Assembly: GCA_950097015.1 (NCBI GenBank) | Contig: CATNEN010000003.1 | Span: 8,618,001 to 8,682,000, forward strand | Source of the DNA: Macrostomum hystrix | Lineage: Eukaryota > Animalia > Platyhelminthes | Length of the DNA stretch: 64,000 bases | Reading direction: 5' to 3' | Shown: positions 4,693 to 63,659 of the stretch, one piece after another | Position numbering within the stretch: the stretch's first letter is position 1 | How the letters are laid out: every line of letters starts with the position of its first letter | Notes under the pieces: generated by a model | What the model saw: the letters and a program-made list of their open reading frames with translations, nothing else | What the model was told of the DNA's origin: nothing | The model's database searches: none | Position numbers and translations under genes: made by a program

Positions 4693-4799
4693 TACACAGA
4701 TTACAGGGTGCTAATACACTATTATAGAGCAAGTATAGTTAGGCCAGATGAATATGAACAGTGATGCAATGGTGTTTGTTACATGGTGTTTCCAATTGC

Positions 4800-35412: not shown

Positions 35413-37389
35413 TGCAAAAAAATCTGTAAGAAATAAAAATGATGTTGAAGAAATGATTTTTGGCTGTGCAAAGTTTAGTTTGCAAGTACTAGAAGCTTGT
35501 AAACACAATAACAGTGCATACACTGTTTTTTACAGTTTTATATGAATAGATAGTATTTTCATTTAAGTATCATAGTTTTTTAATATATTCTAGATAAAAT
35601 ACTACAGTATTAACTATTTACTCTATTTGATCTGGCTTACAGTGATTGTTAGAAAAGGAATGTAACCTTTGGACAAGATAATCAGGCTCACAATTTGGTT
35701 CTATAAGCACTTCAGGTTTTTGCCCTTGATAAAATATAAAAGGGTATAGTGCATATAAGACACAATCACAGCACACACTGGAATATAGGGCACAGGGCAC
35801 TATAGTCAGAAATAGTCTTGATACTGGAGTTGTGTTAATTATTTAAATGACTATTCAATTTTTTAAATTGTTTTTTTGCAAGCTTAAATAGTTAAAAATT
35901 ACAATGCTTATAGTAATCTAAGATAGATATTCTTAGTGAGAAATATAAATATTTATGAAATCTAAAGCTATATTTTTAACATTTAACAATTGTAATGTTG
36001 TAAGAAATTCTTATGAATTTGTAATTTTGACTTTTTGAGAACAAATATTATTAGAAAAAATGAAAATGATTCAAGATTTTAAGATAATAGACAGCAGAAC
36101 AATACAACATTCACTTTGTTAATTTTTTCTTTGTTTTTTGTGAACACTGAAGTTTATTTCCTTTGGCATCAACAACACCAACAATTTGTCTATAAAATAT
36201 CCTATGAGAATTATATTATAGATTAGATTATAATGCTTGAGCTAAAATAAATACAGTTAAATATATATAACCTTAAAGCTATTAACTTAGTCTAGCCAGA
36301 CAGAAAAATATTGGAACTTTTATATTATTGAACAGGGCAACATAATGACTTTTTGCATGCAAATAATTTTACATATTAACATAATTTGCATATATTAATT
36401 CCTGACTGTAACTTCTTTAATTTTCCATAAATAATTGACAATTAGCCAAAAGTGGCAAAATTCAGAAAATTTCTAGGAAAACCAATGTACTGCTTAATCA
36501 ACAGTCACATATCAATTAGCATTGCTGTGAAAACTAAAAGTTAAAACTGTCACTGTCAGTGTTATTGAATTTAACAGTTGGGCCTAGGGGCCTAGCCCAA
36601 TTCAAGTATAGAGATAAAGAAAACTGAAGCAACAGAATTTTTTTCAAAAAATAGAAAACAGTAAGTTTATGAACTGGGTCAAAAAGGCATAGCTATGTTT
36701 TAAATAACTTGACGACTATGGGAAACTTGGAAGAACGCAATACTGCGCTCGAAGAATAAAATTTGTTTTGTCCTTTAAAAGGTAAATTGCAGATTGCTCA
36801 AACATTTTTATTTTTGGCTATAACAAAACCTGTCATAATTGTAACGAGGCAACTTATTATTTTAAGTGGACCCTATCTTTTTGACTTAAAAACAAATACT
36901 AAAGAATTCTAGGCTGTATGTTTTTATCTTAAAATTTTTATAAGAATGAAGGGTTTTGTGTTCATTTAAAACTTCAATTATGATGCTAATCTCGTCTTTA
37001 TTTGTGATGTTGCACTTGTCTTCTCCATGTAAATTTATCACCTTGATTATAATTGTCTATTACCTTTCGCCGTGTAATTTTTTCTATCACTGTACCCTAA
37101 AGCTTAAGACATTATTAGTTTAGTCTCTTTCCTCTAGTATATAATACAGAAAAACATTTGTAAGATTTATATCCATTATTGATTTATTGTCTAGGTCTAA
37201 ACCTAGTAGTCTTACTAAAAATGTTCTTTGGTTTAATCTCGGCTTTTTGGTTACCAAATATTTATGAAACAACACACTTTCTTTACAATGACAAACCTTT
37301 TTGGCCCTGTGGTTACCTAGATGTATTACATCAGTAATTTTGGTAATTTCTTTTCATTGTTTTGGTAAACACTGACTAGGCTTCTAGTG

Positions 37390-43950: not shown

Positions 43951-45029
43951 GAACTCACTAACAAATTGACTCATTCAGTCGTTCACGCGAGTCTATGGGT
44001 GCAGTTCTTTTAAGATATTATAACTTATAAGATAGAATTAATAAATAACACAAAAGTAACACAGACGTATTTTCACGGTTCTGTCTGTCGTATCCCAACC
44101 CTCCTCTTGTCCCCAAACCTCTCTCGGCTCCAGCCAGATGTGCCAAGCCTGCATTGGGACACGTGTTTGCGCACCGCTAAATGGATAGAGCCGCATTAGA
44201 CTAGAGGGAGATGGAGAGAGTGTAGGATGCCAGAGTGCTAGAAAAATCCATCCCCACCCATTTTTCTGTCTAAGCATTGCCAAATTGAAATTTCCCTTTT
44301 CTCCGCATCAAGCTGTACAGTTATCTGCGTGCATGTGTGTGTGTGTATTAACCACATTTTCTTCTCTAGCCTTTGCCTTGCTTTTGAAAGCTTAGGGACT
44401 TTGCATTCCAATTTCTTAGATACTATCCACTGTACTTGATATTTTAAAGCTACAACTAAACGTATAAACTGTTACACATACTAAATGTTTGGAACTAGAA
44501 AATTATTCATATGCGATTATATACTTGCACCCTGGCCCTCTCTATTAGCTTGCTTCTATGTGTTGTTTCTTTCACTATTTCTGTGCAGTTCTATTCATTT
44601 TCTCTTTTAGAATTGTCGATTTTATTGTAGCCTGTGAGGCTGCTAAATGTCGGGTGATATTTGGTGTAACTATTTTTAGAATTAACACTGCTAATACATG
44701 AACACATCTTTTTGTGTTTGCAAGAAAATTATTACTTTAAGTAATAAGGATACTTTATAATGATGATTTATAATATTCTTCGAGTTTTTTATTATTAACT
44801 ATATTCACAATTTTTGGCAAGCAAATTATTTTAAAACTTCAGTCTAGCATGCACGTTTTTTATTATATTTTACTCTCTATCGAATGTACCTTTACCTACC
44901 AAGTCAGTTTTATTTGCCATAAACCTAACTATATCTACCATCAAATCTATTATTTCTGCCACAAAAACTTTCTCATCTACGATAAAATATACTTTATGTT
45001 ACCATTAACTTACTGTATCCACCATTGAA

Positions 45030-46340
45030 TCTACTTTATCTACCATGAACTGACTTTAGCTACCATCAACTACAATTTCTTGCATAAAATCTTCCTTATC
45101 TACTCTAAACTCTACTTTATCTACCATGAAATCTACTTTATCTACCATGAACTGACTTTAGCTACCATCAAATCTACAATTTCTTGCATAAAATCTTCCT
45201 TATCTACTCTAAAATCTACTTTATCTATCATGAAATCTACTTTATCTACAATTTCTTTCATAAAATCTTCCTTATCTACTCTAAAATCTACTTTATCTAC
45301 CATGAAATCTACTTTATCTACCATAAACCGACTTTAACTACCATTATATCTACAATTTCTTGCATAAAATCTTCCTTATCTGCTCTAAAATCTACTTTAT
45401 CTACCATGAAATCTACTTTATCTACCATAAACCGACTTTAACTACCATTATATCTACAATTTCTTGCATAAAATCTTCCTTATCTGCTCTAAAATCTACT
45501 TTATCTACCATGAAATCTACTTTATCTACCATAAACCGACTTTAACTACCATTATATCTACAATTTCTTGCATAAAATCTTCCTTATCTGCTCTAAAATC
45601 TACTTTATCTACCATGAAATCTACTTTATCTACCATAAACCGACTTTAACTACCATTATATCTACAATTTCTTGCATAAAATCTTCCTTATCTACTCTAA
45701 AATCTACTTTATCTACCATGAAATCTACTTTATCTACCATAAACCGACTTTAACTACCATTATATCTACAATTTCTTGCATAAAATCTTCCTTATCTACT
45801 CTAAAATCTACTTGATGTACCATGATATCTACTTTATGTTCCATAAACCTACTTTATCTACCATGAAATCTACTTTATCTACCATAAACCGACTTTAACT
45901 ACCATTATATCTACAATTTCTTGCATAAAATCTTCCTTATCTGCTCTAAAATCTACTTTATCTACCATGAAATCTACTTTATCTACCATAAACCGACTTT
46001 AACTACCATTATATCTACAATTTCTTGCATAAAATCTTCCTTATCTGCTCTAAAATCTACTTTATCTACCATGAAATCTACTTTATCTACCATAAACCGA
46101 CTTTAACTACCATTATATCTACAATTTCTTGCATAAAATCTTCCTTATCTACTCTAAAATCTACTTTATCTACCATGAAATCTACTTTATCTACCATAAA
46201 CCGACTTTAACTACCATTATATCTACAATTTCTTGCATAAAATCTTCCTTATCTACTCTAAAATCTACTTGATGTACCATGATATCTACTTTATGTTCCA
46301 TAAACCTACTTTATCTACCTTAGAATCTACTTTATCTACC
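45030..46340. repeat. 104-nt tandem repeat built from ~21-nt subunits (AAATCTACTTTATCTACCATG-like)
   Basis: Near-identical pseudo-ORFs recur at 45360, 45464 and 45568 (period 104). Confidence 0.95.
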
Positions 46341-46544
46341 ATACACCTACTTTAAGTAGCATTAAATGTGCTAAGAAATCTACTTAATTTGACAATATAT
46401 GCCTTAAAATCTACCTAATTAACTTTTTTAAGTTATTTGTTCAGGATCTTCTACTGTCAAACGGTGAGTAAAAGCCATAGCAACTGGTTCGCATTGCAGT
46501 GAGTCGCCAATTAAGCGCAGCCAGCAGCAGCCATCCATAGCCTG

Positions 46545-49500
46545 ATGGAGCACGCCAGCGGCGGACCCTTATCGAACGGTCCGCTATCCAATGGCCCAAT
46601 GTCTAATGGGCCAATGTCGAATTTATCGACGCATCACTCCGAGAACGGCTTTAATCAGAGGCGCCGACTAGAAGAATGGCAATTGCCAACTATTTTATAT
46701 TTTCTTGCGTTTCACAAGAAGCGATTCAAATTTCCGCGCATTCGCCTGACCGATCTGGATCGGGTGTTGGATAGTCCCGACACCAGCGTCCTGCGAGACA
46801 TTCTAGCCAGAATGCTGCGCGTGATGCGAGGCGGAGATCCCAATGTTACTATGCTCAATGCTGAGCAGCAGATGGCTATGTACTTTCAGGTGAGAATGGC
46901 TTTCATGAAAAATGAAATTGAGGGTATTTTAAATCCTTCGTCGTCTTTCTACTGAAAATTCCAACGGTGACATGTTGATTTATATGGGAATCAGTGAACT
47001 GACAATTGTTTGTTTTTAATTCTCTTCTAGGAGAAGCGGCCCCAGATTGCCAAGCAGTTATCTACTAGTCGCCTAGACGACCTGGGCTTCGAAGCCAAAA
47101 CTCGCCTATTAAAGAAAGTCATCGACTATTTAAACGACGATCTAATCCCAAATTGGGAGATGGAATCAATGCGCTACGACTCGCAACAGCAGGATGACTG
47201 CGGTGCTATCAATTGCGGCGCCGATAGGCGAAATCGGCGACACTTCTACTTGGACGATCATCGGCTCTATCGGCAGCGATTAGACGACGACACCTGCGGC
47301 AATGGCGCCATCGGACCTTGCGGCAGTGTTGGCAGTGTCGGCAGCGTTGGCAGCGGCGGCGGCAGCCCGCCGGCCTCACAACAGGCCTACGAAATGGTTG
47401 TCGGACCGTGCGCCGAAGACTGGGAGAAATTCATCAGCGACATGCTGGCTTCTAGAAATGCCAACGAGCGGGATTTAGGAGAATTTCTACAGGTTTGAGT
47501 TGTTTATAATATCCCTGTCATTACTTCATGTTATTCAATATGACATTTTCCGATCCTCCATGACCAATTTTCATTACTTATGACCTACTGTCCTACCTCC
47601 ATGACCTACTTAGCTACACCCATGACCTACTTAGCTACACCCATGACCTACTTAGCTACACCCATGACCTACTTAGCTACACCCATGACCTACTGTCCTA
47701 CCTCCATGACCTACTTAGCTACACCCATGACCTACTTAGCTACACCCATAACCTACTGTCCTACCTCCATGACCTACTTAGCTACACCCATGACATTCTA
47801 AGCTACACCCATGACCTACTTAGCTACACCCATGACCTACTTAGCTACACCCATGACCTACTTAGCTACACCCATGACCTACTTACCTACACCCATGACC
47901 TACTAACCTACGTCCATGACCAACTAATCTACATCTCAATCCGACCTTGCCCAAACAGGGCTTCCTATTGGACATTGTTGTGCCTGAGCTTCGTCAGGGC
48001 GGCCACATGCTTGGCAACGAGGAGCTGCAGCCCGACTGCCTGCTGCGGATGGAGCGGCTGCACTGTCGCGAACTTCGTCAGGCTCGCAATGAGCCAATTC
48101 CGCCAGAGGAGGAAGCCGAAGCTCACGCGGCAGCCGTTGCCGCAGCCGTTCTAGAATCGACAGCGAATGATCAGCAGCCGCCGCAGCTGCAGCATCACAG
48201 TCAGCAGCAGGAGCAGCCGCACAGCTGTCCGCCTGTACAGCAGCAGCACTCGTACCCTGGCATGGGTCCGGCAATATCCAGCTCCGCCAGCATCAACGGA
48301 CCGAGAAGTGTCGGCCATCAGCCGGCTTCAACGCCGCACACACCGTCAGCTCTGGTGCCGCCGCATACGCCGAACTCCTCGTCGGCAATGAATCCGCCGT
48401 CAGTGTCAACTGGTCAGCAGCCGATAGCGTCGTCTTCTACTTTATCGACGTCAATGTCGGCTTCTTTAGCTACGCCGAGCTCTGTTAGTCAGGCCTCTTA
48501 TCAGCAGCAGCAGCAGCAGCAGCAGCAGCAATCGGTGGCGACTGCGGCCGTTGCTAGCAGTCCTGCTGTCGCGCAATTAAATTCAGTTTATCCTCCTAGT
48601 AGCAACAGCAGCGGATTTCAGTCGAATGCACCGATTTCTCAACCACAGCAACAGATGCGAGATGTCAAGGTAAGCCTGCTAGTCTTTAAAAATATTCGTA
48701 GTGTTGCTTTCATTGAAATTGTAGTTTTTTTCTGGATATTTTACTATTTGCTAGTTTGGATTTTACTGTTGGTATGGAATTTTAAGAGCGTCAGACTCAC
48801 AACTTGAAGGTCGGGGGTTCGATTACCGACTCCACCTGGAACAATTTGTGTCCTTAGACACAGTGCTTTAATTTATCCCAGCTGTCAAATGGGTACCAGC
48901 ATCAGCTGGATTAATTGAGGGTGGATGTGGCAGCTGCGGCTGTTGCTGTGCTGTCGGCTGCACATCTGTCCCAATTGGAGCAGGTGTATTCAATTATAAA
49001 TGTAATTATTATTATAGGATTTTGCTGTATGCTATTGGGATCTTCACTCTAGCATTGGGATTTTCACTGTTGCTATGGGATTTTTATTGTTGCTATGGGA
49101 TTTTCACTGTTGCAATGGAATCTTGCTGTGGCTATTGAATTTTACTTACGTTTTGCAGATATGAGATTTTAAGCTTTAAGCATGAATATTCTCACACGCT
49201 TAAATAACTATACAAAACAGGGCTAAGTATTGCTTGAGCACAATTGCATATCTATCAAATAGTTTTTTAAACTTGTATTTCACACCACAGCGCCAGATGT
49301 CGCCAATGTTCGACTATAATCAATCGCAGTCTCAGCAGCCGCCATACAGCCAGCATCAACAGCAGCAGCAGTATCCGGATTATTATCATCAACAGCAACC
49401 AGTTAGCGGTTATCAGCCGACATTATCAGCTGATCCTGCAGCGGATTTGCAGTTCGGACAATCCGATTGTGTAAGCTTTCTGCTTGCATTTGTCAGTTAT

Positions 49501-51833
49501 ATCATTTTGCACTAAGACAAGGGTCGCTAACCTTATATTTCTATTTATTAAAACAGAGAAGAAATTAGACCGCATCAGACTTAGGGCCCGAAGATTGCCT
49601 ACCTTGCATGTGATTCTCCCATTCATTGATTTCCTTCTAGTTCCCATCGTCTGTCTCTCCGCCATGGAGCAGTGGCGCTAGCGGCGGCAGCATAGCTTCT
49701 CATCCTCACTCGGGGCGTCACTACTCAGCAGCCTCTCAGCATCAGCAGCAGCAGCCGATGGGAAGCTACTCATCCAGCTATCCCCATCAGCCTCCAATGC
49801 AGCAGCAGCAGGCTGGTCATCAGTCAGTGTACTATCCCGGCAATGTCCCGCAGTACACTGGCCGGCAGCCTATTCGGGTATTCACCAGTCATATGGCCAA
49901 CGACTGCGCCAAGCAGTGCCTCTCTGTGCCAGGCTTGAAGCCGGAGCGCTGGCATCAGGCCTGCCTCGATCGCATGGCTCAGCCGCAGCCGCCTCCACCG
50001 CCAGCGTCAGCTCAGCCAGCCGCTGCCCCAGCAGTCACTCCCGAGCAGCTGAGAAAACGAGACGAAAAGCTGCAGCGCATCAAGCAGATTGGCCAGACTG
50101 TCGGCTTGTCAGCTTCAGCTCAGTCTCAGCCGCAGCCTCCGTCAGCTTCGCTGCCAATCGACACTCCTTTAAGTACGCCAGCGTCCGCATCAGCATCGGC
50201 AGCTGCTGCTGCTGCCGCAGCTGCTGTAGCGGCTGCTGGGCTTCCGCCGCCGCACAGCGCGGACCAGGCCAGGGCACAGCAGCAGTGGAAGGACATGGTT
50301 AGGCAGCACTACATGGACAATCCCTACGCGGCCGCTCCTTATCATCAGCACGGCGGAGTGCCGGCCCATCCCGCTCAGTTTGTTCAGCACCAGATGATGC
50401 AGCAACAGCAGCAGCCGCCTCCTTCACCCTACGCTCAGCATCCCAATGCTGCCGCTGCTGCTGCTGCCGCCGCCGCTGCCGCAGCCGCCGCGGCCACCGC
50501 CAACTCGCCGCATCCGGTTGGCGGAAAGCGGCCCTACAATCATCCAGCTGGCGGCCCGATGATGCCGCCGCAGCCGCAGATGCCGATGCACCATCATCCT
50601 CATCAGTATCAGCCGCCTCCGCATCATCAGCAGCCGAGAATGGCACCTCCGTTCGATGATCCAATGATGATGTATCCGCAGCCGCCACTTCAGCAGCAAC
50701 AGCAGCCGCCGGTGCCGCAGCCGCCTCCGCCGCCGCCGCCGCCACCGCCAGCAGCACCTCCCAAGGCAACGAAACGACGCAAGAAGGAGCCCGTGGAGCC
50801 GCAACCGCCGCCTCCGCCGCCGCCAGTGTCCGAACCGCTGATGAATAAGCTGCCGATGGACTCAATGTCACCCTATGATCATCATCATCAGCAGCAGCAG
50901 CAGGTTCTGGCACCGCAACATCAGCCGCTGCTGCCGCCTTCTCCGCATTCGTCATCAAATTCTTCGCGATCATCCGGCCTTGGCAACATCACGTCCGCTA
51001 GTCTGGCCAGCCTAGCCAAACTCAGCAAGGATGTACCAATGGGTGGCGGCCCGTTTCAGTCTATTAGCATGGCCCAGCCTGTAGCTCAGCATCAGCCGCA
51101 GACTCAACCGCAGCAGCAGCAGCAGCAGCTACAACAACCGCCGCACCAGCCCGTGGTCGTTAATAATACATTTGTCAATGCGCAATTAAATGTACAGCAG
51201 ATGAACTATCAGACTGTGAACGGTATGGGCGCCCAGGCTCATATGCAGGTTCAGCAACAACAGCAGCAGCCGCAGCCGATGTCTCACCATCCGGCATCGT
51301 CGACCACGGCTGGCGGTGTACAGATTTCGGCTCGCAGCGCGAACACAATCCAATACATGCCCACAGCGTCGCCAGTAGCGCCAGCCGCTGGCTCCAATGC
51401 GGCGGCCGGAGCTGCCGCTGTCGTCGGCTCCTCAGCTCCTGGATCGTCGTCAGCAGCGTCATCGGCTATGGCTGCCGCTGCGGCGGCGTCGGCGGCTGCG
51501 GCGGCTGCGACTTCTTCTTTAACAGCTACAAGCTATCATCACACCCAGCCTCATCAACCTCATCAGCAGCAGCAGCACTACCCTATGTATCCACATCAGC
51601 AGCAGCAGCAGCAGCAGCAGCAGCACACTTACTACCAGCAGCAGCAATATCAGCAGTACCAGCAGCAGCACATGATGTCTCAACGCCAGCACATGATGTC
51701 ATCGTCTGCGGATTACACCCCGGACTATGCTCGACAGTACCCGGAATATTTGCAGTATCCTACTCAGCATCATCACCATCAGCAGCAGCAGCAGCAGCCT
51801 CCGCCGCCATCCTACCCGCATCATGCTATGTAG
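46545..51833 (+). CDS. BCL9: BCL9/Legless-like beta-catenin co-activator with an N-terminal CECR2/RSF1-like DDT-WHIM module (~1296 aa)
   Basis: Exons 46545-46889, 47031-47492, 47959-48669, 49291-49470, 49641-51833, all phase 0 GT-AG and in frame. HD1-like IRVFTSHMANDCAKQC..WH; HD2-like VTPEQLRKRDEKLQRIKQIGQT; HD3-like AQQQWKDMVRQHY; NLS-like KRRKK; Q/P/A-rich. N-terminus: WQLPTILYFL..FKFPRIRLTDLD..LDDLGFEAKTRLLKKVIDY..GADRRNRRHFYLDDHRLY..CAEDWEKF..NERDLGEFL. Confidence 0.78.
47575..47925. repeat. 21-nt minisatellite (CCATGACCTACTTAGCTACAC)n
   Basis: Tandem units within intron 47493-47958. Confidence 0.95.
48775..48935 (+). mobile_element. tRNA-derived SINE, family B, with a conserved-core-like block
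   Basis: GGGTTCGATTACC B box followed by gtcctt..cccagctgtcaaatgggtacc, resembling the central cores of widespread metazoan SINE superfamilies. Confidence 0.65.
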
Positions 51834-52954
51834 GTTCGCATAGAGTTTTACTTTGGCGCTACAGTGGAAAGTTGACTGATCAAACTTAAGCAATTGTTTT
51901 AAATTGGTGCCATAATTCTAGTTTGGGGTTGGTTGAAATTTGCTTCGATATTTGCCGGCAAAGAAAAACTTGTCCATTTTTTCTACCAGTTTTTCATACA
52001 ATTGATGAGTAAACTGCAGCTGCTGAAATTATTTATTTAACTTGACAGTTAGTTCATTTTTATATACTTTTTTTGATGTACTGATAGTGTAGCTATTTTT
52101 TCTTATCCGATCCATCCATTTAGGTTTTCTCGTTAGTTTTTTTTGCATGGCAACTAAAAAGAAAAAATAATTATATTCGAACAAATCAAAACTTACTGTG
52201 TTTTTCTGTTCTTTTTTTAATTCGTATTATTATTTTTCTTAGAATAAAAGCCATTTGCTTGTTGGTGTCTTTTCGATTCAGTTTCACAGCCTGGTCGATC
52301 AGTTTTTTTCTTGCTTCGCAGTTTTTTTTAGCTTTTTTTTATTCGCATTGTACTTAAAAACATAAGATGAAATACAGTTTTTACATCTACTCATATAAGT
52401 AGTGCGTGGGACATTTTTCATTAAAACAGTGTATGTGGCGTCAGTTGATTTTAATCTTTTATAACCATAATTTATCTGCTGTAGTAGCCACTGCTGTTTC
52501 AATTTTTACTGATGATGAAACTGTTTTAAAGATTAATTTTTATGTGTTCTATATAGCAATCTAACTTATTTGTAAAAGATGTCCATTTTGTAATAAGTGT
52601 GTCCATGTACATTGCCCATTGTCCAGTAGGGCTGAAACTTGCACAGATGTTTAATTTTTTAAGCCGTTCTTTTTACTTATGTTACAATTAGTAGTTTGTT
52701 ATTGCTATTTGTATTATCGAATTCGCAAAAACATGCAAACACAACAAACTCGCTTGTTTGTTTTATAACTTGTAATTTAGAATGTAAAAAAATATATTTA
52801 TTTATATAATTTATACAAACTTTTGTTCATAGCCGTAAAAATTATATAAGGTTTCAACTGACAGCATTTTAGCTTTTGTTATTTGTATTTCTGTGCAGTA
52901 AAATTTTAGACCAAGGGCTAGTAAATAATTATTTGCTGTAATAAGTCGATTATA

Positions 52955-54957: not shown

Positions 54958-57900
54958 ATGCTGAGACTGCTTCTATTGCAAATTGTCATGGTTGCGACTT
55001 CTGTCAATGCCGACTCCATCGACCTCGATGCTGCCACATTTCACAAGACAATCGACACGAACGACGCCTCCCTGGTGATGTTCTACGCGCCCTGGTGCCC
55101 GCACTGTCAGGAGGCGAAACCGAAATTTGCCAGCGCTGCGAAAGAGGTGGCTAAGGAGCCCAGCAAAGTGTTGGGCATGATCAACTGCGACGAGAAGAAA
55201 AACCAAGGTTGGTTGCCATGGCAACAGATTTATCATTGTCTACTGTATCTGCTGTTCTATTCTACTCTACTATTCACAATACTATCAAATCTACGGTCTA
55301 CTCTACTTTCTACTCAAATATCTACTCTACAATAGACTTTAAATTATGAATCCCTGTCTAACAGTTAGAAATCCCTGTCTAACACTTAGAAATCCCTGTC
55401 TAACAATTAGAAATACATGTCTTAAAATTAGAAATCCCTGTCTAACAATTAGAAATCCCTGTCTCACAGTCAGAAATCTCTGTCTAACAGTTAGAAATCC
55501 CTGTCTCACAGTTAGAAATCCCTGTCTAACAATTAGAAATCCCTGTCTAACAGTTAGAAATCCCTGTCTAACAGTTAGAAATCCCTGTCTCACAGTTAGA
55601 AATCCCTGTCTAACAGTTAGAAATCCCTGTCTAACAGTTAGAAATCCCTGTCTAACAATTAGAAATCCCCGTCTAACAATTAGAAATCCCCGTCTAACAG
55701 TTAGAAATCCCTGTCTTAAAATTAGAAATCCCTGTCTAACAATTAGAAATCCCTGTCTAACACTTAGAAATCCCTGTCTAACACTTAGAAATCCCTGTCT
55801 AACAATAGGAAATCCCTGTCTAACACTTAGAAATCCCTGTCTAACACTTAGAAATCCCTGTCTAACAATTGGAAATCCCTGTCTATCACTTAGAAATCCC
55901 TGTCTAACGATTAGAAATCCCCGTCTAACAATTAGAAATCCCTGTCTTAAAATTAGAAATCCCTGTCTAACACTTAGAAATCCCTGTCTAACACTTAGAA
56001 ATCCCTGTCTAACAATTGGAAATCCCTGTCTAACACTTAGAAATCCCTGTCTAACAATTGGAAATCCCTGTCTAACAATTGGAAATCCCTGTCTAACAAT
56101 TGGAAATCCCTGTTTAACAATTGAAAATCCCTGTCTAACAATTGGAAATCCCTGTACATCTTTCTACTCTACTCAATTTTTTTTCGCGAATATCTACTTT
56201 ACTTTATAATTTAATATATATTATCTATTACTATCTGCTCTTTAATCTCGTTTTCAAACTATCTATATACCACCAAGTGCATTTGGTAATCTCAAATTCT
56301 CTATTAATTGTCTATCCCTAATTTTGTGCCCCAAAAGATCTGTGCGCAAAAGAGAAAATTGAGGGCTACCCTACCATCAAGTTCTACAGCAAGGGAAAGC
56401 TCATTCAAGACTACGAAGACGACAACACCGAGAAAGCTTTTATCGACTTCATGAAGAACCCGCCTAAGGAGGGCGAGAAGCGACAACCGTCCGCCACATC
56501 AGAGAAGGACGATCAGGATAGCGAACCCGACACCTTGTGAGTGTAAACAGCTTATACACCTGTTCAATAGTGTTAGACAGCTTATACACCTGTTCATTAG
56601 TGTTAGACAGCTTATACACCTGTTCATTAGTGTTAGACAGCTTATACACCTGTTCAATAGTGTTAGACAGCTTATACACCTGTTCAATAGTGTTAGACAG
56701 CTTATACACCTGTTCAATAGTGTTAGACAGCTTATACACCTGTTCAATAGTGTTAGACAGCTTATACACCTGTTCAATAATAGTGTTAGACAGCTTATAC
56801 ACCTGTTCAATAATAGTGTTAGACAGCTTATACACCTGTTCATTAGTGTTAGACAGCTTATACACCTGTTCATTAGTGTTAGACAGCTTATACACCTGTT
56901 CATTAGTGTTAGACAGCTTATACACCTGTTCAATAGTGTTAGACAGCTTATACACCTGTTCATTAGTGTTAGACAGCTTATACACCTGTTCATTAGTGTT
57001 AGACAGCTTATACACCTGTTCAATAGTGTTAGACAGCTTATACACCTGTTCATTAGTGTTAGACAGCTTATACACCTGTTCATTAGTGTTAGACAGCTTA
57101 TACACCTGTTCAATAGTGTTAGACAGCTTATACACCTGTTCAATAATAGTGTTAGACAGCTTATACACCTGTTCAATAATAGTGTTAGACAGCTTATACA
57201 CCTGTTCATTAGTGTTAGACAGCTTATACACCTGTTCATTAGTTAGACAACTCATATGCCCGTTTATTGATAATCTAAAAAGTTTGAAAAGTGACCTAGA
57301 ATTTCAATGTTTGATAGAGGAACTACTGGAAAATTATCCTGCAGTCGTCCAAAGCAATTAATGTCAAGGTACCTGTAATTACGCGAATGAAAAATTACAA
57401 ATTTACTAATATTCTTACCTTATTTAGCGATATTCAGATAAGAAATAAAAAATCGATAACACAGGTACTGTAATTGGTGTAAAGTATTATTAAAATCTAT
57501 TAAGATCATGTACTTATAAAAATTTCCTTTATGCCATTAAAATGAGAAAAATGAATTTTAGTATTTTATAAAAGCAAAATTCGTTTATGCACATGGAGCT
57601 AGGTGCAGGAGATGACATATTCAGAGGGGTCAAACCCTTTCTAAAAGTTTAAAACATCCCTGTCTAACAATTACAAATCCCCGTCTAACAATTAGAAATC
57701 CCTGTCTAACAGGTAGAAATCCCGGTCTAACAATTAGAAATCCCCGTCTAACAATTACAAATCCCCGTCTAACAATTAGAAATCCCTGTCTAACAATTAG
57801 AAATCCCCGTCTAACAATTAGAAATCCCCGTCTAACAATTAGAAATCCCCGTCTAACAATTAGAAATCCCCGTCTAACAATTAGAAATCCCCGTCTAACT

Positions 57901-59972
57901 ATTAGAAATCCACGTCTAACTATTAGAAATCCCTGTTTAACAATTAGAAATCCCCGTCTAACAATTAGAAATCCCCGTCTAACAATTAGAAATCCCCGTC
58001 TAACAATTAGAAATCCCCGTCTAACTATTAGAAATCCACGTCTAACTATTAGAAATCCCTGTTTAACAATTAGAAATCCCCGTCTAACAATTAGAAATCC
58101 TCGTCGCTGTTGAGGCAATTATAAAAGTGTATATCACAAGTCTATATTGCTACTGTCAGTAGACAGAAGCGAAACTGATAAATTTAAGAATTAAACCTGT
58201 TCGTTCATCAAAACCTCGCAGTATGACAGGCGTCACCTACCTTGGCGCTGGCAACTACACGCAGGTGCTAGACAATAACGAATTCGTTCTAGTGTTCTAC
58301 TATGCTCCCTGGTGTCCTCACTGCAAGGAGAGCAAGCCTAAGTTTGAGCAGGCGGCCAAGGATCTACTCGCCAAACCAGTGGCTGGCAATATCATGGCCG
58401 CCATCAACTGCGATCAGAAGGACAATCAGAGTGAGTAGATTTGGGAATTCGGATTGAAGATTAGACACGTGAGACTGTTAAGTAGACACTTGAGATTTGT
58501 GAGTAGACACGTGAGATTTGTGAATAGACACGTGAGATTTGTAAATAGATACGTGAGATTTGTGACGTAGACTCGTGAGATTTGTGAATAAACACGTGAG
58601 ATTTGTGAATAAACACGTGAGATTTGTGAATAGACACGTGAGATTTGTGAATAAACACGTGAGATTTGTGAATAGACACGTGAGATTTGTGAATAGACAC
58701 GTGAGATTTGTGAATAAACACGTGAGATTTGTGAGTAGAAAGGTGAGATTTGTGAGTAGACATGTGAGACTTGAAAAAAGACACATGAGGTTGTTGGCTA
58801 AGCGCAATACTAGTTGAATAAAAGCGATTTGTTCTAATTCCAGAGCTATGCGAAGACGAGAAAGTGGAAGGCTACCCGACCATCCGTCTGATGAAGAAGC
58901 GCGAGATGTGGGCCGAATTTGAAGACGAGATCGAGGCCAAGCCACTGCTGGACTTCATCAGCAGTCCGCCAAAGGAGAAGGTGCCACCGACGCCTGTTGA
59001 AGAGGAGAAGAAGCCGGGCGAGACTGGCAAAGACGAGACCGCGGCAGCTGGCAGCGCCGAGAAGCCAGAGGACAAGATGCAGCACGTCACCTACCTGGAG
59101 GGCGCCGAGCAATTCAACGAGGCCATCAAGGCCAACAAGCACGTGCTGGCTATGTTCTACGCGCCGTGGTGTCCGCACTGTCAGCAGGCCAAGCCGGCCT
59201 TCGACAAGGCGGCTGAGGCTTTGACTGGCGCCCAGGGCAAAGCACTGGCCGCTGTAAACTGCGATGTCAAGGCTAACGAGAGTGAGTAGGACTGGGGATG
59301 CGACTGGGGATGAGACTATGGATGAGACTGGGGATGAGACTTGGGATGAGACTGGGGATGAGACTTGGGATGAGACTGGGGATGAGACTGGGAATGAGAC
59401 TGGGGATGAGACTTGGGATGAGACTGGGGATGAGATGGGGATGAGACTGGGGATGAGACTGGGAATGAGACTGGGGATGAGACTGGGAATGAGACTGGGG
59501 ATGAGATGGGGATGAGATGGGGATGAGACTTGAGATTGGACTGTGGATGAGAAAGTTAAAAATGAGAGAGACAGGGAAAGATACGACAGGGGAGAGATGA
59601 CGCAGGGAGAGATAAGACAGGGAAGAGACGAAACAGCCAAGGGATTGAAAAATAAGAAGAGAGATAAGACTCGGTAGAAATGCGAGCGGTCAGTCAGCCG
59701 GATTTGTTCGAAAGCCTGTGGGCAAGACCATGCTCTACTAAGTAGTAGCATGCGACTATTGCTCTAAAATATCTTTTAACTCATTGATATGTTCGATTAT
59801 ATTCGCAGAGCTGTGCGAAGATCAGCGCGTCGAGGGCTTCCCAACCTTCATGCTGTTCAGCGACGGCAAGAAGAGTCAGGACTACGCGGAGTCGCCCATT
59901 ACTGAAGCCGGCGTTAAGGATTTCATGGAAAAGCTGCCAGCTGACGCGACCACCAAGAAGGACGAGCTGTAA
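54958..59972 (+). CDS. ER protein disulfide isomerase, PDIA5/PDIR-like, with three WCPHC thioredoxin domains and KDEL
   Basis: Exons 54958-55207, 56338-56536, 58222-58430, 58844-59281, 59809-59972, in frame. Signal peptide MLRLLLLQIVMVATSVNA; three YAPWCPHC..NCD..N(Q/E).LC..EG(Y/F)PT domains; C-terminal KKDEL. Confidence 0.9.
55345..56155. repeat. 21-nt minisatellite (AGAAATCCCTGTCTAACAATT)n, PDI intron 1
   Basis: Tandem units; same family as 57655-58100. Confidence 0.97.
56545..57245. repeat. 30/33-nt minisatellite (GACAGCTTATACACCTGTTCAATAGTGTTA)n, PDI intron 2
   Basis: Starts immediately after the donor at 56537. Confidence 0.97.
57655..58100. repeat. 21-nt minisatellite (AGAAATCCCCGTCTAACAATT)n, PDI intron 2
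   Basis: Variant of the intron-1 unit. Confidence 0.95.
58460..58770. repeat. 21-nt minisatellite (CACGTGAGATTTGTGAATAGA)n, PDI intron 3
   Basis: Tandem units. Confidence 0.93.
59290..59535. repeat. 12-nt minisatellite (GAGACTGGGGAT)n, PDI intron 4
   Basis: Tandem units starting right after the donor at 59282. Confidence 0.93.
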
Positions 59973-60701: not shown

Positions 60702-63659
60702 TTAATTGTCATCGATAAGTGGCTCCGTCTCCGAGGTCTCCCGCGGCGCCTCCTCCTTACGGCCCGCGCCGCTGTACAACAGGAGGCCAAGCCGATTGGC
60801 CGAGTTGGCGCCAACGCCGCAGCCGCTGCAGTCCACAATCCTGTCCGGCTTGCACATCCGGTACAGACGGTGCAGCACCTGGGATTCGGCTAGCCGCAGG
60901 TCCGACTCGCTCAGCTTCTCCCGCATCAGCAGGACGGCCAGTGACCTGCGGCGCATGAACAGCGACTCGCTGCTCCACTGGGCGCTGTACATGTTGAGCC
61001 TGTTCTCCAGGAAGCCCCTGCTCAGCACCAGCACCGCGTGCCTGCTCTTGTCTATGGCCGAGGCCGCCTCGTCCAGGATGTTGGCGCCGACGGGCGCGTC
61101 TCGCTCCGCTTCGTACAGGCGGAGCTGCAGGTCCGACTCGAGCTTGAGAACCAGGGCCTGCACCCACTCCGTCACCGCGTTGTCCGACTCGTCGTAGATG
61201 AAGCAGGCGCTGCGGGATTTTAGTGCATATGACGGGGAATAAAATTACTCAGACGAATATCCTATCTTTGGAACGGTGGGAGTTCAGGCGGGATTGCCTT
61301 CTCGCTGCCTCGATTCGACTTGTTGTCTAAATGATGTGTCAGTGCTCAAATTCATTGCTATGTCCTATCGAGAGCCCAATTAATCCAAGCAATTCCGTAC
61401 AGGAAAATTGAGATGTACTCACTCATAGACCCATTCAGTGGGCACTTTGCGTATTAACAGACCATACCGAATGCAGAAGGCAAGCAGTGTGTACCTCAGC
61501 TTCCATCGGTAGCGCACAATCAGACTAATGAGGCTGAACAACACAATCAGGCATCCTATAGAAGAGGACAGAAGTACAATGAGCCGCCTGTTGTAGCAGT
61601 CCCACCAGGATAGGCGGAAGTCTATCACCCGGATGCTTGTATTGTAACAGTTGGCATCCAGGAGCCAGTCAGCTTTGCTCTCCAACTTGTACAGGGGCCA
61701 TTGCTGCCTAATCCAGTTTGCGAATGGTAGCAGCTCGCAGTTGCAGGCAAACTGGTTGCGGCCCAGCCTGATGCGGATATTTGCAATGCGGCTGAATGTC
61801 AGTGGGTCAACGCTTGCTAGTGGCACCTGCATTAAGCGCAGCTCTTGAAGCCTTGGCGTCTGAGACACTAGCAGATTCACTGGAATGCTAGAAAATTTGT
61901 TACCCTGGACATCAAGAAAATTTAGGCTTGGAAATTTTCTGCTCAAAAAGAATTCGATTCGAGTCATGGCATTATTGGCAAGATGCAACATTGTCAGAGT
62001 CGGTAGCTTGGCTAATAAAGCCTTAACCATTCCGTCTGACTGCGAACCAAAGTTACACCCGGTGAGGTCCAGCTCTTGAATGCCAGTAAGCGGATCAAAG
62101 AACTGATGCCCGTGGCATTCTTTTTTATTTAAAAAATTATTGTGAGACAGACTGAGCACTCTTAGCTTTGAGCAGTTGCGAAACCATGTTCGACCAATCG
62201 GACAAGGAGTCTTGAGTTTTTGCACGTCAACCAGATTATTGAGGTACAAAGCCGTCAGATTCGGTTGGTCGACAAACGCGTTGACAAGAGGTTCATAGTA
62301 CCAGATATTTATCAGTTTCAAGGTTTCGAGGCCAGGCAAAATGCCTCTCAGATCTGTTGCCCCCAGCCTTATGGGGTTATAACTAAGGTCCAGGTAGGTG
62401 ATTTGACTCTGATTAATGAGCAGTTCCTTTGGGAATTCGCTTAGCGTGTTATGGATCAGCCGAAGATTGCTCAACTGCGTTAGGCGGCTGAACGCATGCG
62501 GTGGCAGATCTTCGTTGCTCAGTTTGCAGTTGGTCATCGACAGCAGGAACAGCTGGGGACAATCAAAGTACCTGTCGGCATCCGAGAAACTGATTCGCGA
62601 GTGACTCAGCGATAAGCGTCTAAGCAGAGGCAGCGATCTGCATAGTGCGTTGAACTCCTCAAATGGAAAGCCTTGCTTCTTATAGTTGAACTCTAGTGCG
62701 AGGGTTCTCATTTGAAGAGGTTCTCTAACGTGAGAGATGGCACTGAGCAGTTTTGGCAGCAGTTTTTCATCGAGTCCCGCTCCAGTCACGGAGACGTCTT
62801 TCAGCGTCAAGTTTTGAAATGGCGTCGGTCCAATACTAACTAACCGGGTGCTATGAAATTGCAATTTGTATAGGTCGAAGCCTTTTAATCGTGCCGGACC
62901 ATCTAAGCTGAATTTTTGTGTGCCACTGTCGGAAAACAATAACTCCAGCGCGCTCTTGGTTCCGAGATTGTTGAAGGACAAGCTCGAGAAGTTGCCGTTG
63001 ACCTTCGGCAGGCTGCCGTGCCAACGAAAGGCAAATGATAGCGAGCTCGTGTTCAGCACTAGGTCGATTCGATCAAACAGCTTTGGAGAAAAAACTACAG
63101 TGAACAGTTTCAATGCCGTCAATCTCAGTAGCGATCTAGGTCCGAAGCGTCGTTCCTTGACTTCGGCGGCCATGCCTTGGATAAGAATTTCTGTCAACCC
63201 TACCGGACAGCAGAAAATGTCTGAGAATTGTTCCAGGTCCATTGACATGTTACTGGATCGCAGCGCAAAGGCAGAAAGCTTTGGCAGTTTTGAAAAAACA
63301 CGAACCTGGTTAAACACGAAGCTGCAGAATGGGCCGATGCTTAGCTCCTTGATGCGACGCCACTGCTCATGGCGGAACAGGTCCGAAGTGAACTCAATGA
63401 TTGGATGTATCGAGCTACGTTGATTGCAGCTCAAGACTACTTTTCTCAGCGGACAGCTGTTCGGGTCGATTGAAGCGCCGATAGCGTCCATGCCTGCTTG
63501 GCTGAAGCAGTTCTGCATTGCTAAGCAAGTGAGAACTGTTTCGTCGTCTCTAAGGCTGCAGTCGCATTGCTCGGGGAACCTGCAAGGCACAGGTGAATCG
63601 GAGGCTTCACTGCCGGCGAATAGGTACAGTACGAGCAGGACTCTCAGACCAGTACTCAT
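60702..63659 (-). CDS. Toll-like receptor (signal peptide, LRRs, single LRRCT, TM, TIR)
   Basis: Exons 63659-61423 and 61209-60702 (phase 2, GTGAGT..CCCGCAG). Splicing rebuilds TIR box 1 VYDACFIYDE; box 2 LYEAERDAPVG; SAIDKSRHAVLVLSRGFL. Ectodomain has LxxLxLxxN repeats and NQFACNC..C..C; TM LIVLLSSSIGCLIVLFSLISLIV followed by RYRW. Confidence 0.9.

What the first reader, a model, noticed from the sequence alone, without database searches (positions are those of the whole stretch)
46545..51833. Apparent fusion of an ISWI-binding DDT-WHIM module (CECR2/RSF1 type) to BCL9/Legless HD1-HD2-HD3
Seen: five exons join in one frame through canonical phase-0 splice sites into a ~1296-aa protein. Established: BCL9/Legless HD1 binds Pygopus and HD2 binds beta-catenin, and the vertebrate and fly proteins I know have no chromatin-remodeller domain; DDT plus WHIM motifs are the ISWI-binding and nucleosome-spacing modules of CECR2/RSF1/BAZ/BPTF. 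By eye, the first ~280 aa match the CECR2 N-terminus in order (W.LP.I..F..F; L.L..K..LL....DY; G.D.....+YL...RLY; C.EDW; ER.L...L), and the last exon carries HD1-3 in the correct order. No bromodomain or PHD is visible. Inference: one polypeptide may hard-wire the Wnt enhanceosome to an ISWI remodeller. I know of no described BCL9 with this architecture.
Basis: partly seen in the sequence, partly recalled or inferred. Interest (0 to 1): 0.88.

Follow-up and report, generated by a model that had tools for sequence, protein, structure and literature searches.

The report
Flatworm BCL9-like gene with extra front domain
A macrostomid flatworm makes one messenger RNA for a BCL9/Legless-like Wnt co-activator that starts with a conserved 300-residue helical module absent from fly and human BCL9; the module may be a very diverged ISWI-partner (DDT-WHIM) domain, but no test here confirmed that.

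Summary
The gene model is real. Five phase-0 GT..AG exons (46545-51833, 1296 codons) are carried, already spliced, by intron-free contigs of three public runs. The exon 3-4-5 joints link the front module to the HD exon. A paralogue on another contig and Macrostomum lignano models show the same build.

The back half looks like BCL9/Legless:
- HD1, HD2 and HD3 lie in the right order and keep published contact residues.
- HD2 matches the published BCL9 peptide (3 of 2000 shuffles reach its score).
- HD1 docks on this genome's own Pygopus PHD finger (ipSAE 0.46, best control 0.01: weak support).
- Three C-terminal motifs recur in Schistosoma.
- Pfam BCL9 does not fire.

The front half is conserved (dN/dS about 0.1), but its DDT-WHIM identity is unproven:
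- Against: no Pfam DDT, WHIM1 or WSD hit; no similarity to this genome's own DDT-WHIM genes; both AlphaFold models poor (pLDDT 35-40); fold searches empty.
- For: DDT/WHIM/WSD language-model neighbours (0.87), sub-threshold KIAA2026_hel hits, and a conserved GxD motif.

ISWI binding was not tested. The scan had already flagged the same idea on the paralogue (s1-402489).

Verdict: a new variant of a known kind, of moderate interest.

The parts
46500..46544 (+). 5' UTR part of exon 1. An AG acceptor sits at 46498-46499 and an in-frame TAA at 46512-46514.
   Evidence: Contigs begin to match at 46499, with about 24 unmatched letters before it. Those letters could be an upstream exon or a spliced leader; this was not resolved. 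Sequence read.
46545..46889 (+). Exon 1 (115 codons): start codon, SNGP repeats, then the first helices of the N-terminal module.
   Evidence: It is 71% identical to the paralogue.
46677..46826 (+). DDT-like helix-loop-helix-helix stretch (WQLPTILYFLAF...LTDLDRVL...LRDILARMLRVM).
   Evidence: Sub-threshold PF23450 KIAA2026_hel match, aa 47-91, E 0.029. The same match appears in P0002 at E 0.0084. AlphaFold predicts helices here at low confidence. There is no Pfam DDT hit.
47031..47492 (+). Exon 2 (154 codons): the middle of the N-terminal module.
   Evidence: An exhaustive phmmer search found only three clusters, all macrostomid-like fragments. dN/dS against the paralogue is about 0.1.
47073..47141 (+). 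WHIM1-like helix (LDDLGFEAKTRLLKKVIDYLNDD).
   Evidence: Assigned by eye. In the paralogue this stretch matches PF23450 positions 110-136 below threshold. The six-frame PF23450 hit spans window 46683-47129.
47205..47282 (+). WSD-like part 1: GxD motif (G-A-D, 47217-47225) and a predicted beta-hairpin (RHFYLDDHRLYRQ).
   Evidence: GxD is kept in the window gene, the paralogue and the M. lignano proteins. Strands are predicted here. There is no Pfam WSD hit, and pairwise scores against canonical WSD exons are at chance.
47283..47381 (+). Variable Gly/Ser-rich insert inside the module.
   Evidence: Alignment A4. Tandem repeat rows at 47320-47360.
47385..47492 (+). WSD-like part 2: a strand (YEMVV) and a long helix (CAEDWEKF...NANERDLGEFLQ).
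   Evidence: Conserved in all copies. Secondary structure.
47493..47958 (+). Intron 2, which holds a 21-bp x 17 minisatellite (47580-47933).
   Evidence: Contig depth is zero here.
47959..48669 (+). Exon 3 (237 codons). The first ~52 codons (47959-48114) are the last conserved helices of the module. The rest is a Q/S/P-rich linker with (CAG)n at 48502-48530.
   Evidence: In the paralogue, exons 2 and 3 are contiguous in one open frame.
48670..49290 (+). Intron 3, which holds a repeat with a tRNA-like 3' arm (about 48780-48830) and a 20-bp repeat (49013-49143).
   Evidence: The joint 48667>49289 (GT..AG, cut +2) is seen in three runs. Contigs pile up very deep on 48692-49073, which indicates a dispersed repeat. 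ARAGORN finds no tRNA.
49291..49470 (+). Exon 4 (60 codons): Q/Y-rich linker.
49641..51833 (+). Exon 5 (730 codons plus TAG): the BCL9/Legless-like part.
   Evidence: The joint 49470>49641 (GT..AG) is seen in three runs.
49866..49976 (+). HD1-like element (QPIRVFTSHMANDCAKQCL...WHQACLDRM).
   Evidence: S, A, N, A stand at the published contact positions T182, A185, N186, A189 (PMC2726290). It is conserved in the paralogue, P0001 and P0005. The predicted complex with the genome's own Pygo PHD scores ipSAE 0.46 against a best control of 0.01, which the tool rates as weak support.
50031..50111 (+). HD2-like helix (VTPEQLRKRDEKLQRIKQIGQTVGL).
   Evidence: The local alignment to the published BCL9 peptide scores 36. 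That score is reached by 3 of 2000 shuffles and 0 of 186 background frames. dN/dS is 0.11.
50268..50321 (+). HD3-like helix (ARAQQQWKDMVRQHYMDN).
   Evidence: It has a tryptophan with His-Tyr at +7/+8. The published definition is an invariant W plus an F/Y doublet (PMC5352222). The paralogue has W with Y at +7.
50772..50786 (+). KRRKK, a likely nuclear localisation signal.
   Evidence: Kept in the paralogue, P0004 and P0005. The function is inferred.
50985..51065 (+). C-terminal motif 1 (NITSASLASLAKLSKDVP..GPFQSI).
   Evidence: Kept in the paralogue and in Schistosoma P0007-P0009 as LTSASLASLARLSQ.
51153..51224 (+). C-terminal motif 2 (VVVNNTFVNAQLNVQQMNYQTVNG).
   Evidence: Kept in the paralogue. 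In Schistosoma it reads QVNNTFFNAQLNVQQMNYQ, with E 3e-3 against 5.8 billion proteins.
51315..51362 (+). C-terminal motif 3 (GVQISARSANTIQYMP).
   Evidence: Kept in the paralogue (GVQISAKSANTIQYKP) and in Schistosoma (IQITPRTPHTIQYLP).
51834..52100 (+). 3' UTR, at least to 52100.
   Evidence: Contigs run colinear with the genome from 51634 to 52100.

Best explanation
This is one of two paralogous BCL9/Legless-family genes of a Macrostomum-like flatworm.

Shown: a single spliced mRNA encodes 1296 aa.

Back half, inferred from motifs and one weak docking result: it works as the usual Wnt enhanceosome adaptor. HD1 would hold the Pygopus PHD finger, HD2 would capture beta-catenin and HD3 would touch the Chip/LDB-SSDP core. 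Three further C-terminal motifs shared with schistosomes would serve other enhanceosome contacts.

Front half: ahead of this adaptor, joined by a Q/S/P-rich disordered linker, sits a ~310-residue module (six helices, a beta-hairpin carrying a GxD motif, a Gly/Ser insert, a strand and long helices). It is under strong purifying selection and is not described in fly or vertebrate BCL9. Its most likely identity is a very diverged member of the DDT-WHIM / KIAA2026-type helical modules, so the protein would tether the enhanceosome to chromatin (linker DNA or an ISWI-type remodeller). That last step is inference and is no better than even odds.
For: One mRNA:
- Spliced, intron-free contigs in three runs cover E1-E2-E3 and E3-E4-E5 at equal depth.
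- An in-frame stop lies upstream of the ATG, and the 3' UTR is colinear with the genome.

Architecture conserved:
- The paralogue on contig C25 has E1-E3 in one open frame, plus downstream exons with HD1, HD2, HD3 and the C-terminal motifs.
- M. lignano proteins P0001 and P0005 join both parts.

Constraint: dN is about 0.2 with dS saturated, so dN/dS is about 0.1 for the module, and dN is about 0.16-0.19 for HD2 (dN/dS 0.11) and the C-terminal motifs.

BCL9 side:
- HD2 aligns to the published peptide with p about 0.0015.
- HD1 and HD3 keep published key residues.
- A Pygo orthologue exists in the genome, and its PHD finger docks HD1 at 0.46 against 0.01.
- Two BCL9 clusters rank 2nd and 3rd among named language-model neighbours at 0.78, which is a lead only.
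- The Pfam BCL9 scan found no other locus in the genome.

Module side:
- The nearest named language-model clusters are WHIM1/DDT at 0.87 with 174 shared features, WSD at 0.84 and RSF1-like at 0.84.
- PF23450 matches at E 0.008-0.05 on two colinear stretches.
- GxD is conserved.
- There is a precedent: Paramecium WSD proteins visible only to HHpred do bind ISWI (PMC11789628).
Against: - No curated profile supports either module: Pfam BCL9, DDT, WHIM1 and WSD are all blank.
- PDB sequence searches never return BCL9 or a DDT-WHIM protein.
- This genome's own BPTF-like and Acf1-like genes do hit Pfam DDT and WSD. The module shows no similarity to them by hmmsearch, hhalign or shuffled pairwise scores.
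- The AlphaFold models have pLDDT 35 and 40. Foldseek and VIA-align give only generic helical matches with Z up to 6.5.
- The docking pass lies in the weak band, and may reflect memory of the solved Pygo-BCL9 complex.
- HD1 lacks a clear counterpart of I200. In the paralogue, A189 is Ser.
- The module is detectable only in macrostomids among 1.84 billion representatives.
Confidence: 0.55

Rival explanations
1. The gene is a BCL9/Legless orthologue, but its N-terminal module is a lineage-specific helical domain unrelated to DDT-WHIM. It could be a self-association or DNA/partner-binding domain, possibly akin to the KIAA2026 helical domain. It has no link to ISWI.
For: - Every direct test for DDT, WHIM1 and WSD failed.
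- No fold could be obtained.
- The module is found only in macrostomids.
- The best Pfam model is KIAA2026_hel, not DDT, and even that is below threshold.
Against: - Nine of the ten best named language-model neighbours are in the DDT/WHIM/WSD family set.
- The order of motifs (DDT-like helices, WHIM1-like helix, GxD hairpin, strand plus helix with an NER..L...L ending) follows the canonical order.
- Even this genome's canonical Acf1-like DDT and WHIM1 only reach E 0.12 and 0.007 in Pfam, so a more diverged copy would be expected to be missed.
Confidence: 0.33
2. The protein is not a BCL9 relative at all. It is a flatworm Q/P-rich nuclear co-factor whose short HD-like strings resemble BCL9 by chance or convergence.
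For: - Pfam BCL9 and all PDB sequence searches are blank.
- The language-model score for BCL9 clusters is only 0.78, and a QLQ cluster ranks first.
- The docking score is in the weak band.
Against: - Three short elements lie in the canonical order and keep residues that published structures and mutants single out.
- HD2 has p about 0.0015.
- These elements are islands of conservation in otherwise fast-evolving sequence.
- Docking is specific to the Pygo PHD against three controls at 0.01 or less.
- Pygo is present in the genome, and the Pfam BCL9 scan found no other locus.
Confidence: 0.1
3. Two separate genes (a module-only gene and a BCL9-like gene) have been joined wrongly across the CAG repeat in exon 3.
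For: No single contig spans 48492-48538. The runs are not on record as RNA.
Against: - The gap is a 47-nt CAG repeat inside one continuous open exon.
- Depth is equal on both sides.
- The 3' part of exon 3 is spliced to exons 4 and 5.
- P0005 runs from the module through the linker to HD1 and HD2 in one model.
- The paralogue has the same layout.
Confidence: 0.02

Closest known systems
BCL9 / B9L / Drosophila Legless (Wnt enhanceosome adaptors)
   Same: It is a long, mostly disordered nuclear protein. It has an HD1-like Pygo-binding strand-helix, an HD2-like amphipathic helix and an HD3-like helix with W plus an aromatic residue, all in the same order, followed by a basic NLS-like patch and further short C-terminal conserved blocks.
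   Different: - It has a ~310-residue conserved helical module at the N-terminus that is not described for fly or vertebrate proteins.
- HD1-HD2 spacing is much shorter (about 20 residues).
- Pfam BCL9 (PF11502) does not recognise it.
- The counterpart of HD1 I200 is unclear.
- Two paralogues exist in this flatworm.
DDT-WHIM accessory subunits of ISWI remodellers (CECR2, RSF1, BAZ1A/Acf1, BPTF, yeast Ioc3)
   Same: By eye it has the same order of elements: DDT-like three helices, a WHIM1-like helix, a GxD-bearing hairpin, then a helix ending in an (N/R)E..L...L pattern. Language-model neighbours are DDT/WHIM1/WSD clusters.
   Different: - No Pfam DDT, WHIM1 or WSD hit.
- No measurable similarity to the same genome's BPTF-like and Acf1-like genes.
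- No confident fold.
- No bromodomain, PHD or WAC domain.
- A Gly/Ser insert splits the WSD-like part.
- ISWI binding is untested.
KIAA2026 (BRD10) helical domain, Pfam PF23450
   Same: It is the only Pfam model that touches the module. It does so on two colinear stretches, profile positions 2-47 and 110-136.
   Different: Scores are 14-17 bits against a cut-off of 27.8. The genome has its own true KIAA2026-like gene on contig C5 scoring 40.8 bits, and that gene shows no significant pairwise similarity to the module.
Paramecium ICOPa/b (divergent WSD-motif partners of ISWI1)
   Same: They are a precedent for an ISWI partner whose WSD motif is invisible to ordinary profile searches and was found only by HHpred, yet binds ISWI (PMC11789628).
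   Different: They are unrelated in the rest of the protein, come from a ciliate, and have no Wnt link. Their homology was actually shown by HHpred (91.7%), which I could not run here.

Membership tests
BCL9/Legless | HD1: a Pygo-PHD-binding element with invariant T182, A185, N186, A189 and I200 (Fiedler 2008, PMC2726290). | tested here: inconclusive
   The window has F-T-S-H-M-A-N-D-C-A, so S, A, N, A stand at four of the positions. The I200 counterpart is unclear. In the paralogue A189 is Ser. Docking on the genome's own Pygo PHD scores 0.46 against a best control of 0.01, which is weak support.
BCL9/Legless | HD2: an amphipathic helix that binds beta-catenin (published peptide SQEQLEHRERSLQTLRDIQRMLF). 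| tested here: met
   The local alignment EQLRKRDEKLQRIKQI scores 36, reached by 3 of 2000 shuffles and 0 of 186 background frames. Arg and the Leu/Ile heptad positions are kept. Binding itself was not tested.
BCL9/Legless | HD3: a helix with an invariant Trp and a downstream F/Y doublet (van Tienen 2017, PMC5352222). | tested here: met
   In W-KDMVRQ-HY, Trp is followed by His-Tyr at +7/+8. The paralogue has Tyr at +7. The element lies downstream of HD2, as in BCL9. Only one of the two doublet positions is aromatic F/Y.
BCL9/Legless | A match to Pfam BCL9 (PF11502). | tested here: not met
   hmmscan of exon 5, the paralogue exon, P0001 and P0005 gives no hit at E up to 10. The six-frame search of the whole genome finds no candidate.
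DDT-WHIM ISWI accessory subunits | DDT domain (Pfam PF02791). | tested here: not met
   No hit on exon 1, P0001, P0002 or the paralogue frame. The genome scan returns only other loci. Pairwise and HMM comparisons with the genome's own DDT exons are at chance.
DDT-WHIM ISWI accessory subunits | WHIM1 motif (PF15612). | tested here: not met
   No hit. Canonical flatworm copies themselves only reach E 0.007-0.05.
DDT-WHIM ISWI accessory subunits | WSD / WHIM2-3 motif with the GxD signature (PF15613; Aravind and Iyer 2012, as quoted in PMC11789628). | tested here: inconclusive
   There is no Pfam hit. G-x-D followed by a basic run and a predicted hairpin is conserved in all macrostomid copies. Language-model neighbours include WSD clusters at 0.84.
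DDT-WHIM ISWI accessory subunits | A fold like Ioc3 / DDT-WHIM. | tested here: inconclusive
   The AlphaFold models have pLDDT 35.3 and 40.4. Foldseek finds nothing at E 0.001 or better. The VIA-align best match has Z 6.5 on single helices.
DDT-WHIM ISWI accessory subunits | Binds an ISWI ATPase. | not testable with these tools
   The genome's ISWI HAND-SANT-SLIDE region is split over at least three exons, and exons were not to be joined.
KIAA2026 helical domain (PF23450) | A score over the curated cut-off of 27.8 bits. | tested here: not met
   Scores are 14.4-17.1 bits, E 0.008-0.05 per protein.

The most novel reading that the evidence does not exclude
The N-terminal module is a true, extremely diverged DDT-WHIM domain that binds the flatworm ISWI ATPase. 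In macrostomids the Wnt enhanceosome adaptor BCL9 would then carry its own nucleosome-spacing remodeller to TCF enhancers. In flies and mammals that link is made only through separate factors.
Probability: 0.22. Interest if true: 0.75.

Novelty: new variant of a known kind. Interest (0 to 1): 0.5.

Why it matters
BCL9/Legless is regarded as a string of short docking motifs with no folded domain. A copy that carries a conserved 300-residue module would show that the adaptor can gain a chromatin-facing function.

If the module proves to be a DDT-WHIM domain, it gives a direct, testable link between beta-catenin recruitment and ISWI-type nucleosome remodelling. Macrostomum lignano is a regenerating model animal with RNAi and transgenesis, and Wnt signalling sets the body axis in flatworms.

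If the module is instead a lineage-specific domain, the finding is still useful. It annotates the so far unnamed flatworm BCL9 genes: the public models are called 'histone acetyltransferase', 'osa' and 'BHLH', or are unnamed. It also defines three C-terminal motifs shared with schistosomes.

Tried and rejected
Profile and sequence searches that came back blank:
- Pfam on every exon, on P0001, P0002, P0003 and P0005, and on the paralogue frames gave nothing above threshold.
- PDB sequence searches never returned BCL9 or a DDT-WHIM protein. I tried exon 5, the HD1-HD2 piece, HD1 alone, HD2 alone, P0001 and a three-sequence profile.
- Exhaustive phmmer with exon 2 found only macrostomid-like fragments.
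- Word-index searches with the HD1-3 region and with the module found only M. lignano proteins.

Comparisons with this genome's own DDT-WHIM genes (all at chance):
- hmmsearch of a module profile against open frames of the BPTF-like, Acf1-like and KIAA2026-like loci.
- hhalign against each of them.
- Shuffle-calibrated pairwise scores.

Structure:
- AlphaFold of P0001 and of the paralogue's module both gave low confidence. The paralogue reference carries an in-frame 87-nt intron, which I left unaltered.
- Foldseek and VIA-align on the second model returned generic helices only.
- I therefore could not reproduce the earlier agent's statement that the front end folds like a DDT latch.

Other:
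- An ISWI docking test was dropped because the HSS region is split over exons.
- The Pygo-HD1 docking gave weak support only.
- Rfam and ARAGORN on the locus found nothing real.
- Papers: no hit for BCL9 with 'DDT domain' or with Macrostomum. The BCL9+ISWI co-mentions listed look like reviews or unrelated studies by title; only one was opened.

All work was exon by exon, or on database proteins and the paralogue's open frame.

Full report
**The gene model**

The region reads as five exons in one frame:
- E1 46545-46889
- E2 47031-47492
- E3 47959-48669
- E4 49291-49470
- E5 49641-51833

Every intron is GT..AG in phase 0, and the exons total 1296 codons. A TAA at 46512-46514, in frame and in the same exon, fixes the ATG at 46545 as the start.

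**Transcript evidence**

Four runs hold the stretch, with shares of 0.67-0.72; I laid three of them, X2-X4. Exons make up 0.68 of the stretch I searched.

When laid on the window, contigs of X2, X3 and X4 are intron-free and spliced. These runs come from one study and one organism, with about 48 Mb of contigs each.
- One contig of about 1445 nt lies on 46499-46887 | 47029-47488 | 47955-48491.
- Another of about 1188 nt lies on 48539-48667 | 49289-49470 | 49641-50439.
- Further contigs cover 50762-51585 and 51634-52100.

The joints 48667>49289 (GT..AG, cut +2) and 49470>49641 (GT..AG) are listed for all three runs. Introns 2 and 3b have zero depth.

The only breaks are at trinucleotide repeats inside exons, where short-word contigs always break. 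Depth is the same on both sides (14.4 against 13.9; 16.6 against 16.9). So the front module and the HD exon are on one mRNA.

The runs are not on record as RNA. I call them RNA because their contigs lack the introns.

About 24 letters at the 5' end of the first contig do not match upstream of the AG at 46498-46499. They could be an upstream exon or a spliced leader; I did not resolve this.

**Organism and relatives**

The only database relatives are Macrostomum lignano proteins, at 83-87% identity in the module. The genome has 220 Mb in 42 contigs. The window therefore comes from a macrostomid flatworm.
- P0001 (UniRef A0A1I8J858, named 'histone acetyltransferase' by its source) runs from the module straight into exon-4-like and exon-5-like sequence with HD1 and HD2. 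It skips exon 3.
- P0005 (A0A1I8GXQ9, named 'osa') runs from the module through the linker to HD1, HD2 and the KRRKK patch.

The genome holds a paralogue on contig C25.
- One open frame of 515 aa (L004:469-2016, minus strand) carries exons 1-3 contiguously. It is interrupted only by an in-frame 87-nt GT..AG intron inside LLKK|VIDYL.
- Downstream exons carry HD1, HD2, HD3, KRRKK and the three C-terminal motifs.
- Between the two paralogues dS is saturated and dN is about 0.2, so dN/dS is about 0.1 for the module (about 0.2 for its last, exon-3-encoded helices), and dN is 0.16-0.19 for HD2 (dN/dS 0.11) and the C-terminal motifs. The linkers barely align.

The architecture is therefore old, duplicated and maintained.

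**The BCL9 side**

No curated profile recognises it. Pfam BCL9 is silent on every copy and in a six-frame scan of the genome. PDB sequence searches never list BCL9.

What does support it:
- **HD1.** The window reads IRVFTSHMANDCAKQCL. Fiedler et al. (PMC2726290) name T182, A185, N186, A189 and I200 as the invariant Pygo contacts of HD1. The window has S, A, N, A at the first four, and the fifth is unclear.
- **HD2.** EQLRKRDEKLQRIKQI aligns to the published beta-catenin-binding peptide of BCL9 (bioRxiv 10.1101/2024.03.17.584721) with score 36. That score is reached by 3 of 2000 shuffles of exon 5 and by none of 186 background frames.
- **HD3.** QQQWKDMVRQHY has the invariant Trp with an aromatic residue at +8. 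This fits the W plus F/Y-doublet definition of van Tienen et al. (PMC5352222).
- **Order.** The three elements lie in the canonical order.
- **Pygopus.** I found a Pygopus orthologue in the genome (L078:467-1099, minus strand). Its C-terminal PHD finger reads CGACRMQIGD...WYHRACTELSSDAWRML...WLCDDC and ends 14 residues before the stop.
- **Docking.** ESMFold2 docks exon-5 residues 64-116 on that finger at ipSAE 0.46 in three runs, against 0.00-0.01 for three controls. The runs agree in at least 85% of contacts, and the partner's pLDDT is at least 54. The tool rates this as weak support. At 0.60 or under, only 5 of 78 solved complexes pass, as did all 4 mismatches that passed. The pass may come from memory of the solved Pygo-BCL9 complex, which for my purpose (likeness) is still informative.
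- **Language-model neighbours.** For residues 62-240 the neighbours put two 'protein BCL9 homolog' clusters at ranks 2 and 3 with score 0.78. This is a lead only.
- **Schistosoma.** Three C-terminal motifs recur in Schistosoma japonicum and S. bovis models with E 3e-3 to 1e-2 against 5.8 billion proteins. The gene family is therefore flatworm-wide. Those models start downstream of where HD1-3 would be.

I put BCL9-family membership at about 0.8.

**The front module**

It runs from about residue 44 of exon 1 to about residue 52 of exon 3.

Evidence for DDT-WHIM:
- By eye, the motif order fits: ILYFLAF..F.....LTDLDRVL......LRDILARML, then FEAKTRLLKKVIDYL, then CGADRRNRRHFYLDDHRLY, then W.KF...ML.S.N.NER.L..FL.
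- The GxD triplet is kept in all copies.
- The nearest named language-model clusters are WHIM1/DDT (0.87, 174 shared features), WSD (0.84) and RSF1-like WHIM1/WSD (0.84). Nine of the ten best named hits fall in one family set.
- Sub-threshold hits to PF23450 KIAA2026_hel recur on two colinear stretches at E 0.008-0.05.

Evidence against:
- Pfam DDT, WHIM1 and WSD never fire. They do fire on the genome's own BPTF-like gene (DDT 1e-13, WSD 7e-14). On the Acf1-like gene WSD also fires (about 5e-7 on each half), while DDT and WHIM1 only reach E 0.12 and 0.007.
- A profile of the module finds nothing in those genes.
- hhalign gives probabilities near 1%.
- Shuffle-calibrated pairwise scores are at chance, with best z 2.3 in 24 comparisons.

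Structure gave no answer. Two AlphaFold runs with the few sequences available gave pLDDT 35.3 and 40.4. Only the secondary structure is usable: six helices, a hairpin, a strand and long helices. Foldseek and VIA-align returned only generic helical matches.

An earlier agent of this scan, working on the paralogue (s1-402489), wrote that the front end folds like the ISWI latch. I could not reproduce that, and I do not count it as evidence.

The Paramecium ICOP proteins show that ISWI partners can be this hard to see (PMC11789628). I put DDT-WHIM-superfamily membership at about 0.5 and ISWI binding at about 0.2-0.25.

An ISWI docking test was not possible. The HAND-SANT-SLIDE region of the genome's ISWI gene is split over at least three exons, and joining exons was outside my brief.

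**Novelty**

Full-text searches found no paper that pairs BCL9 with a DDT domain or with Macrostomum. The one BCL9+ISWI co-mention I opened is a review, which says that beta-catenin's C-terminus recruits BRG1 and ISWI as separate factors.

The architecture is not annotated. The public M. lignano models are fragments with unrelated names. It is, however, detectable only in macrostomids, and the scan had already noted it on the paralogue.

I file it as a new variant of a known kind: a BCL9/Legless-family gene with an added conserved N-terminal module of uncertain, possibly DDT-WHIM, type.

**Limits**

The joined 1296-aa protein was never built, searched or folded. All searches were exon by exon, by reference, or on database proteins and the paralogue's open frame.

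Noticed in passing
G000:C25:6080272-6086359 (L004:469-2016:-, L009:8030-9532:-, L009:6272-6967:-): A paralogue of the window gene with the same build. Exons 1-3 are fused into one open frame with a single in-frame 87-nt intron at a different place (inside LLKK|VIDYL). The same idea was flagged earlier in the scan as s1-402489.
   Followed up: yes
L078:467-1099:- (G000:C7, about 791.7 kb): A Pygopus orthologue. It has a Q/P-rich tail and a C-terminal PHD finger, with QIGD in place of the EVND loop and S/A/L at the HD1-contact positions. The finger ends 14 residues before the stop.
   Followed up: partly
P0007, P0008, P0009 (Schistosoma japonicum, S. bovis): Unnamed schistosome proteins share the three C-terminal motifs (TSASLASLARLS, VNNTFFNAQLNVQQMNYQ, TIQYLP). 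They are probably 5'-truncated models of the schistosome BCL9 orthologue.
   Followed up: partly
window 48692-49073 (intron 3): A repeat with a tRNA-like T-arm (ggttcgattaccgac, about 48800-48830) that gathers 500-1000x contig depth in the RNA-like runs. It looks like a transcribed dispersed element (SINE-like). ARAGORN calls no tRNA.
   Followed up: partly
window 44909-46364, 47580-47933, 49013-49143: Minisatellites of 104/21 bp, 21 bp and 20 bp lie just upstream of the gene and inside introns 2 and 3. Similar arrays fill much of the window (for example 1449-2540, 3733-4732, 55346-58118).
   Followed up: no
window 31438-32442 (-) and 34432-35523 (-): Two tandem, intronless-looking copies of an hnRNP A/B-type protein, each with two RRMs and a Gly/Tyr-rich tail.
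   Followed up: no
window 60702-63659 (-): A Toll-like receptor gene. A long LRR ectodomain with a transmembrane stretch lies in the 61419-63659 frame, and a TIR-like frame lies at 60702-61175.
   Followed up: no
window 19929-25807 (+): A DEAH/RHA-type helicase gene in several exons. Its last large frame runs into a GRLGMVL minisatellite.
   Followed up: no
L001:1129-1700:+ (G000:C5, about 1.072 Mb): The genome's own KIAA2026/BRD10-like helical domain (PF23450, 40.8 bits). The same frame then runs into a tandem repeat.
   Followed up: no
window 46475-46499: Contigs carry about 24 unmatched letters before the AG at 46498-46499. They could be a short upstream exon or a trans-spliced leader.
   Followed up: no
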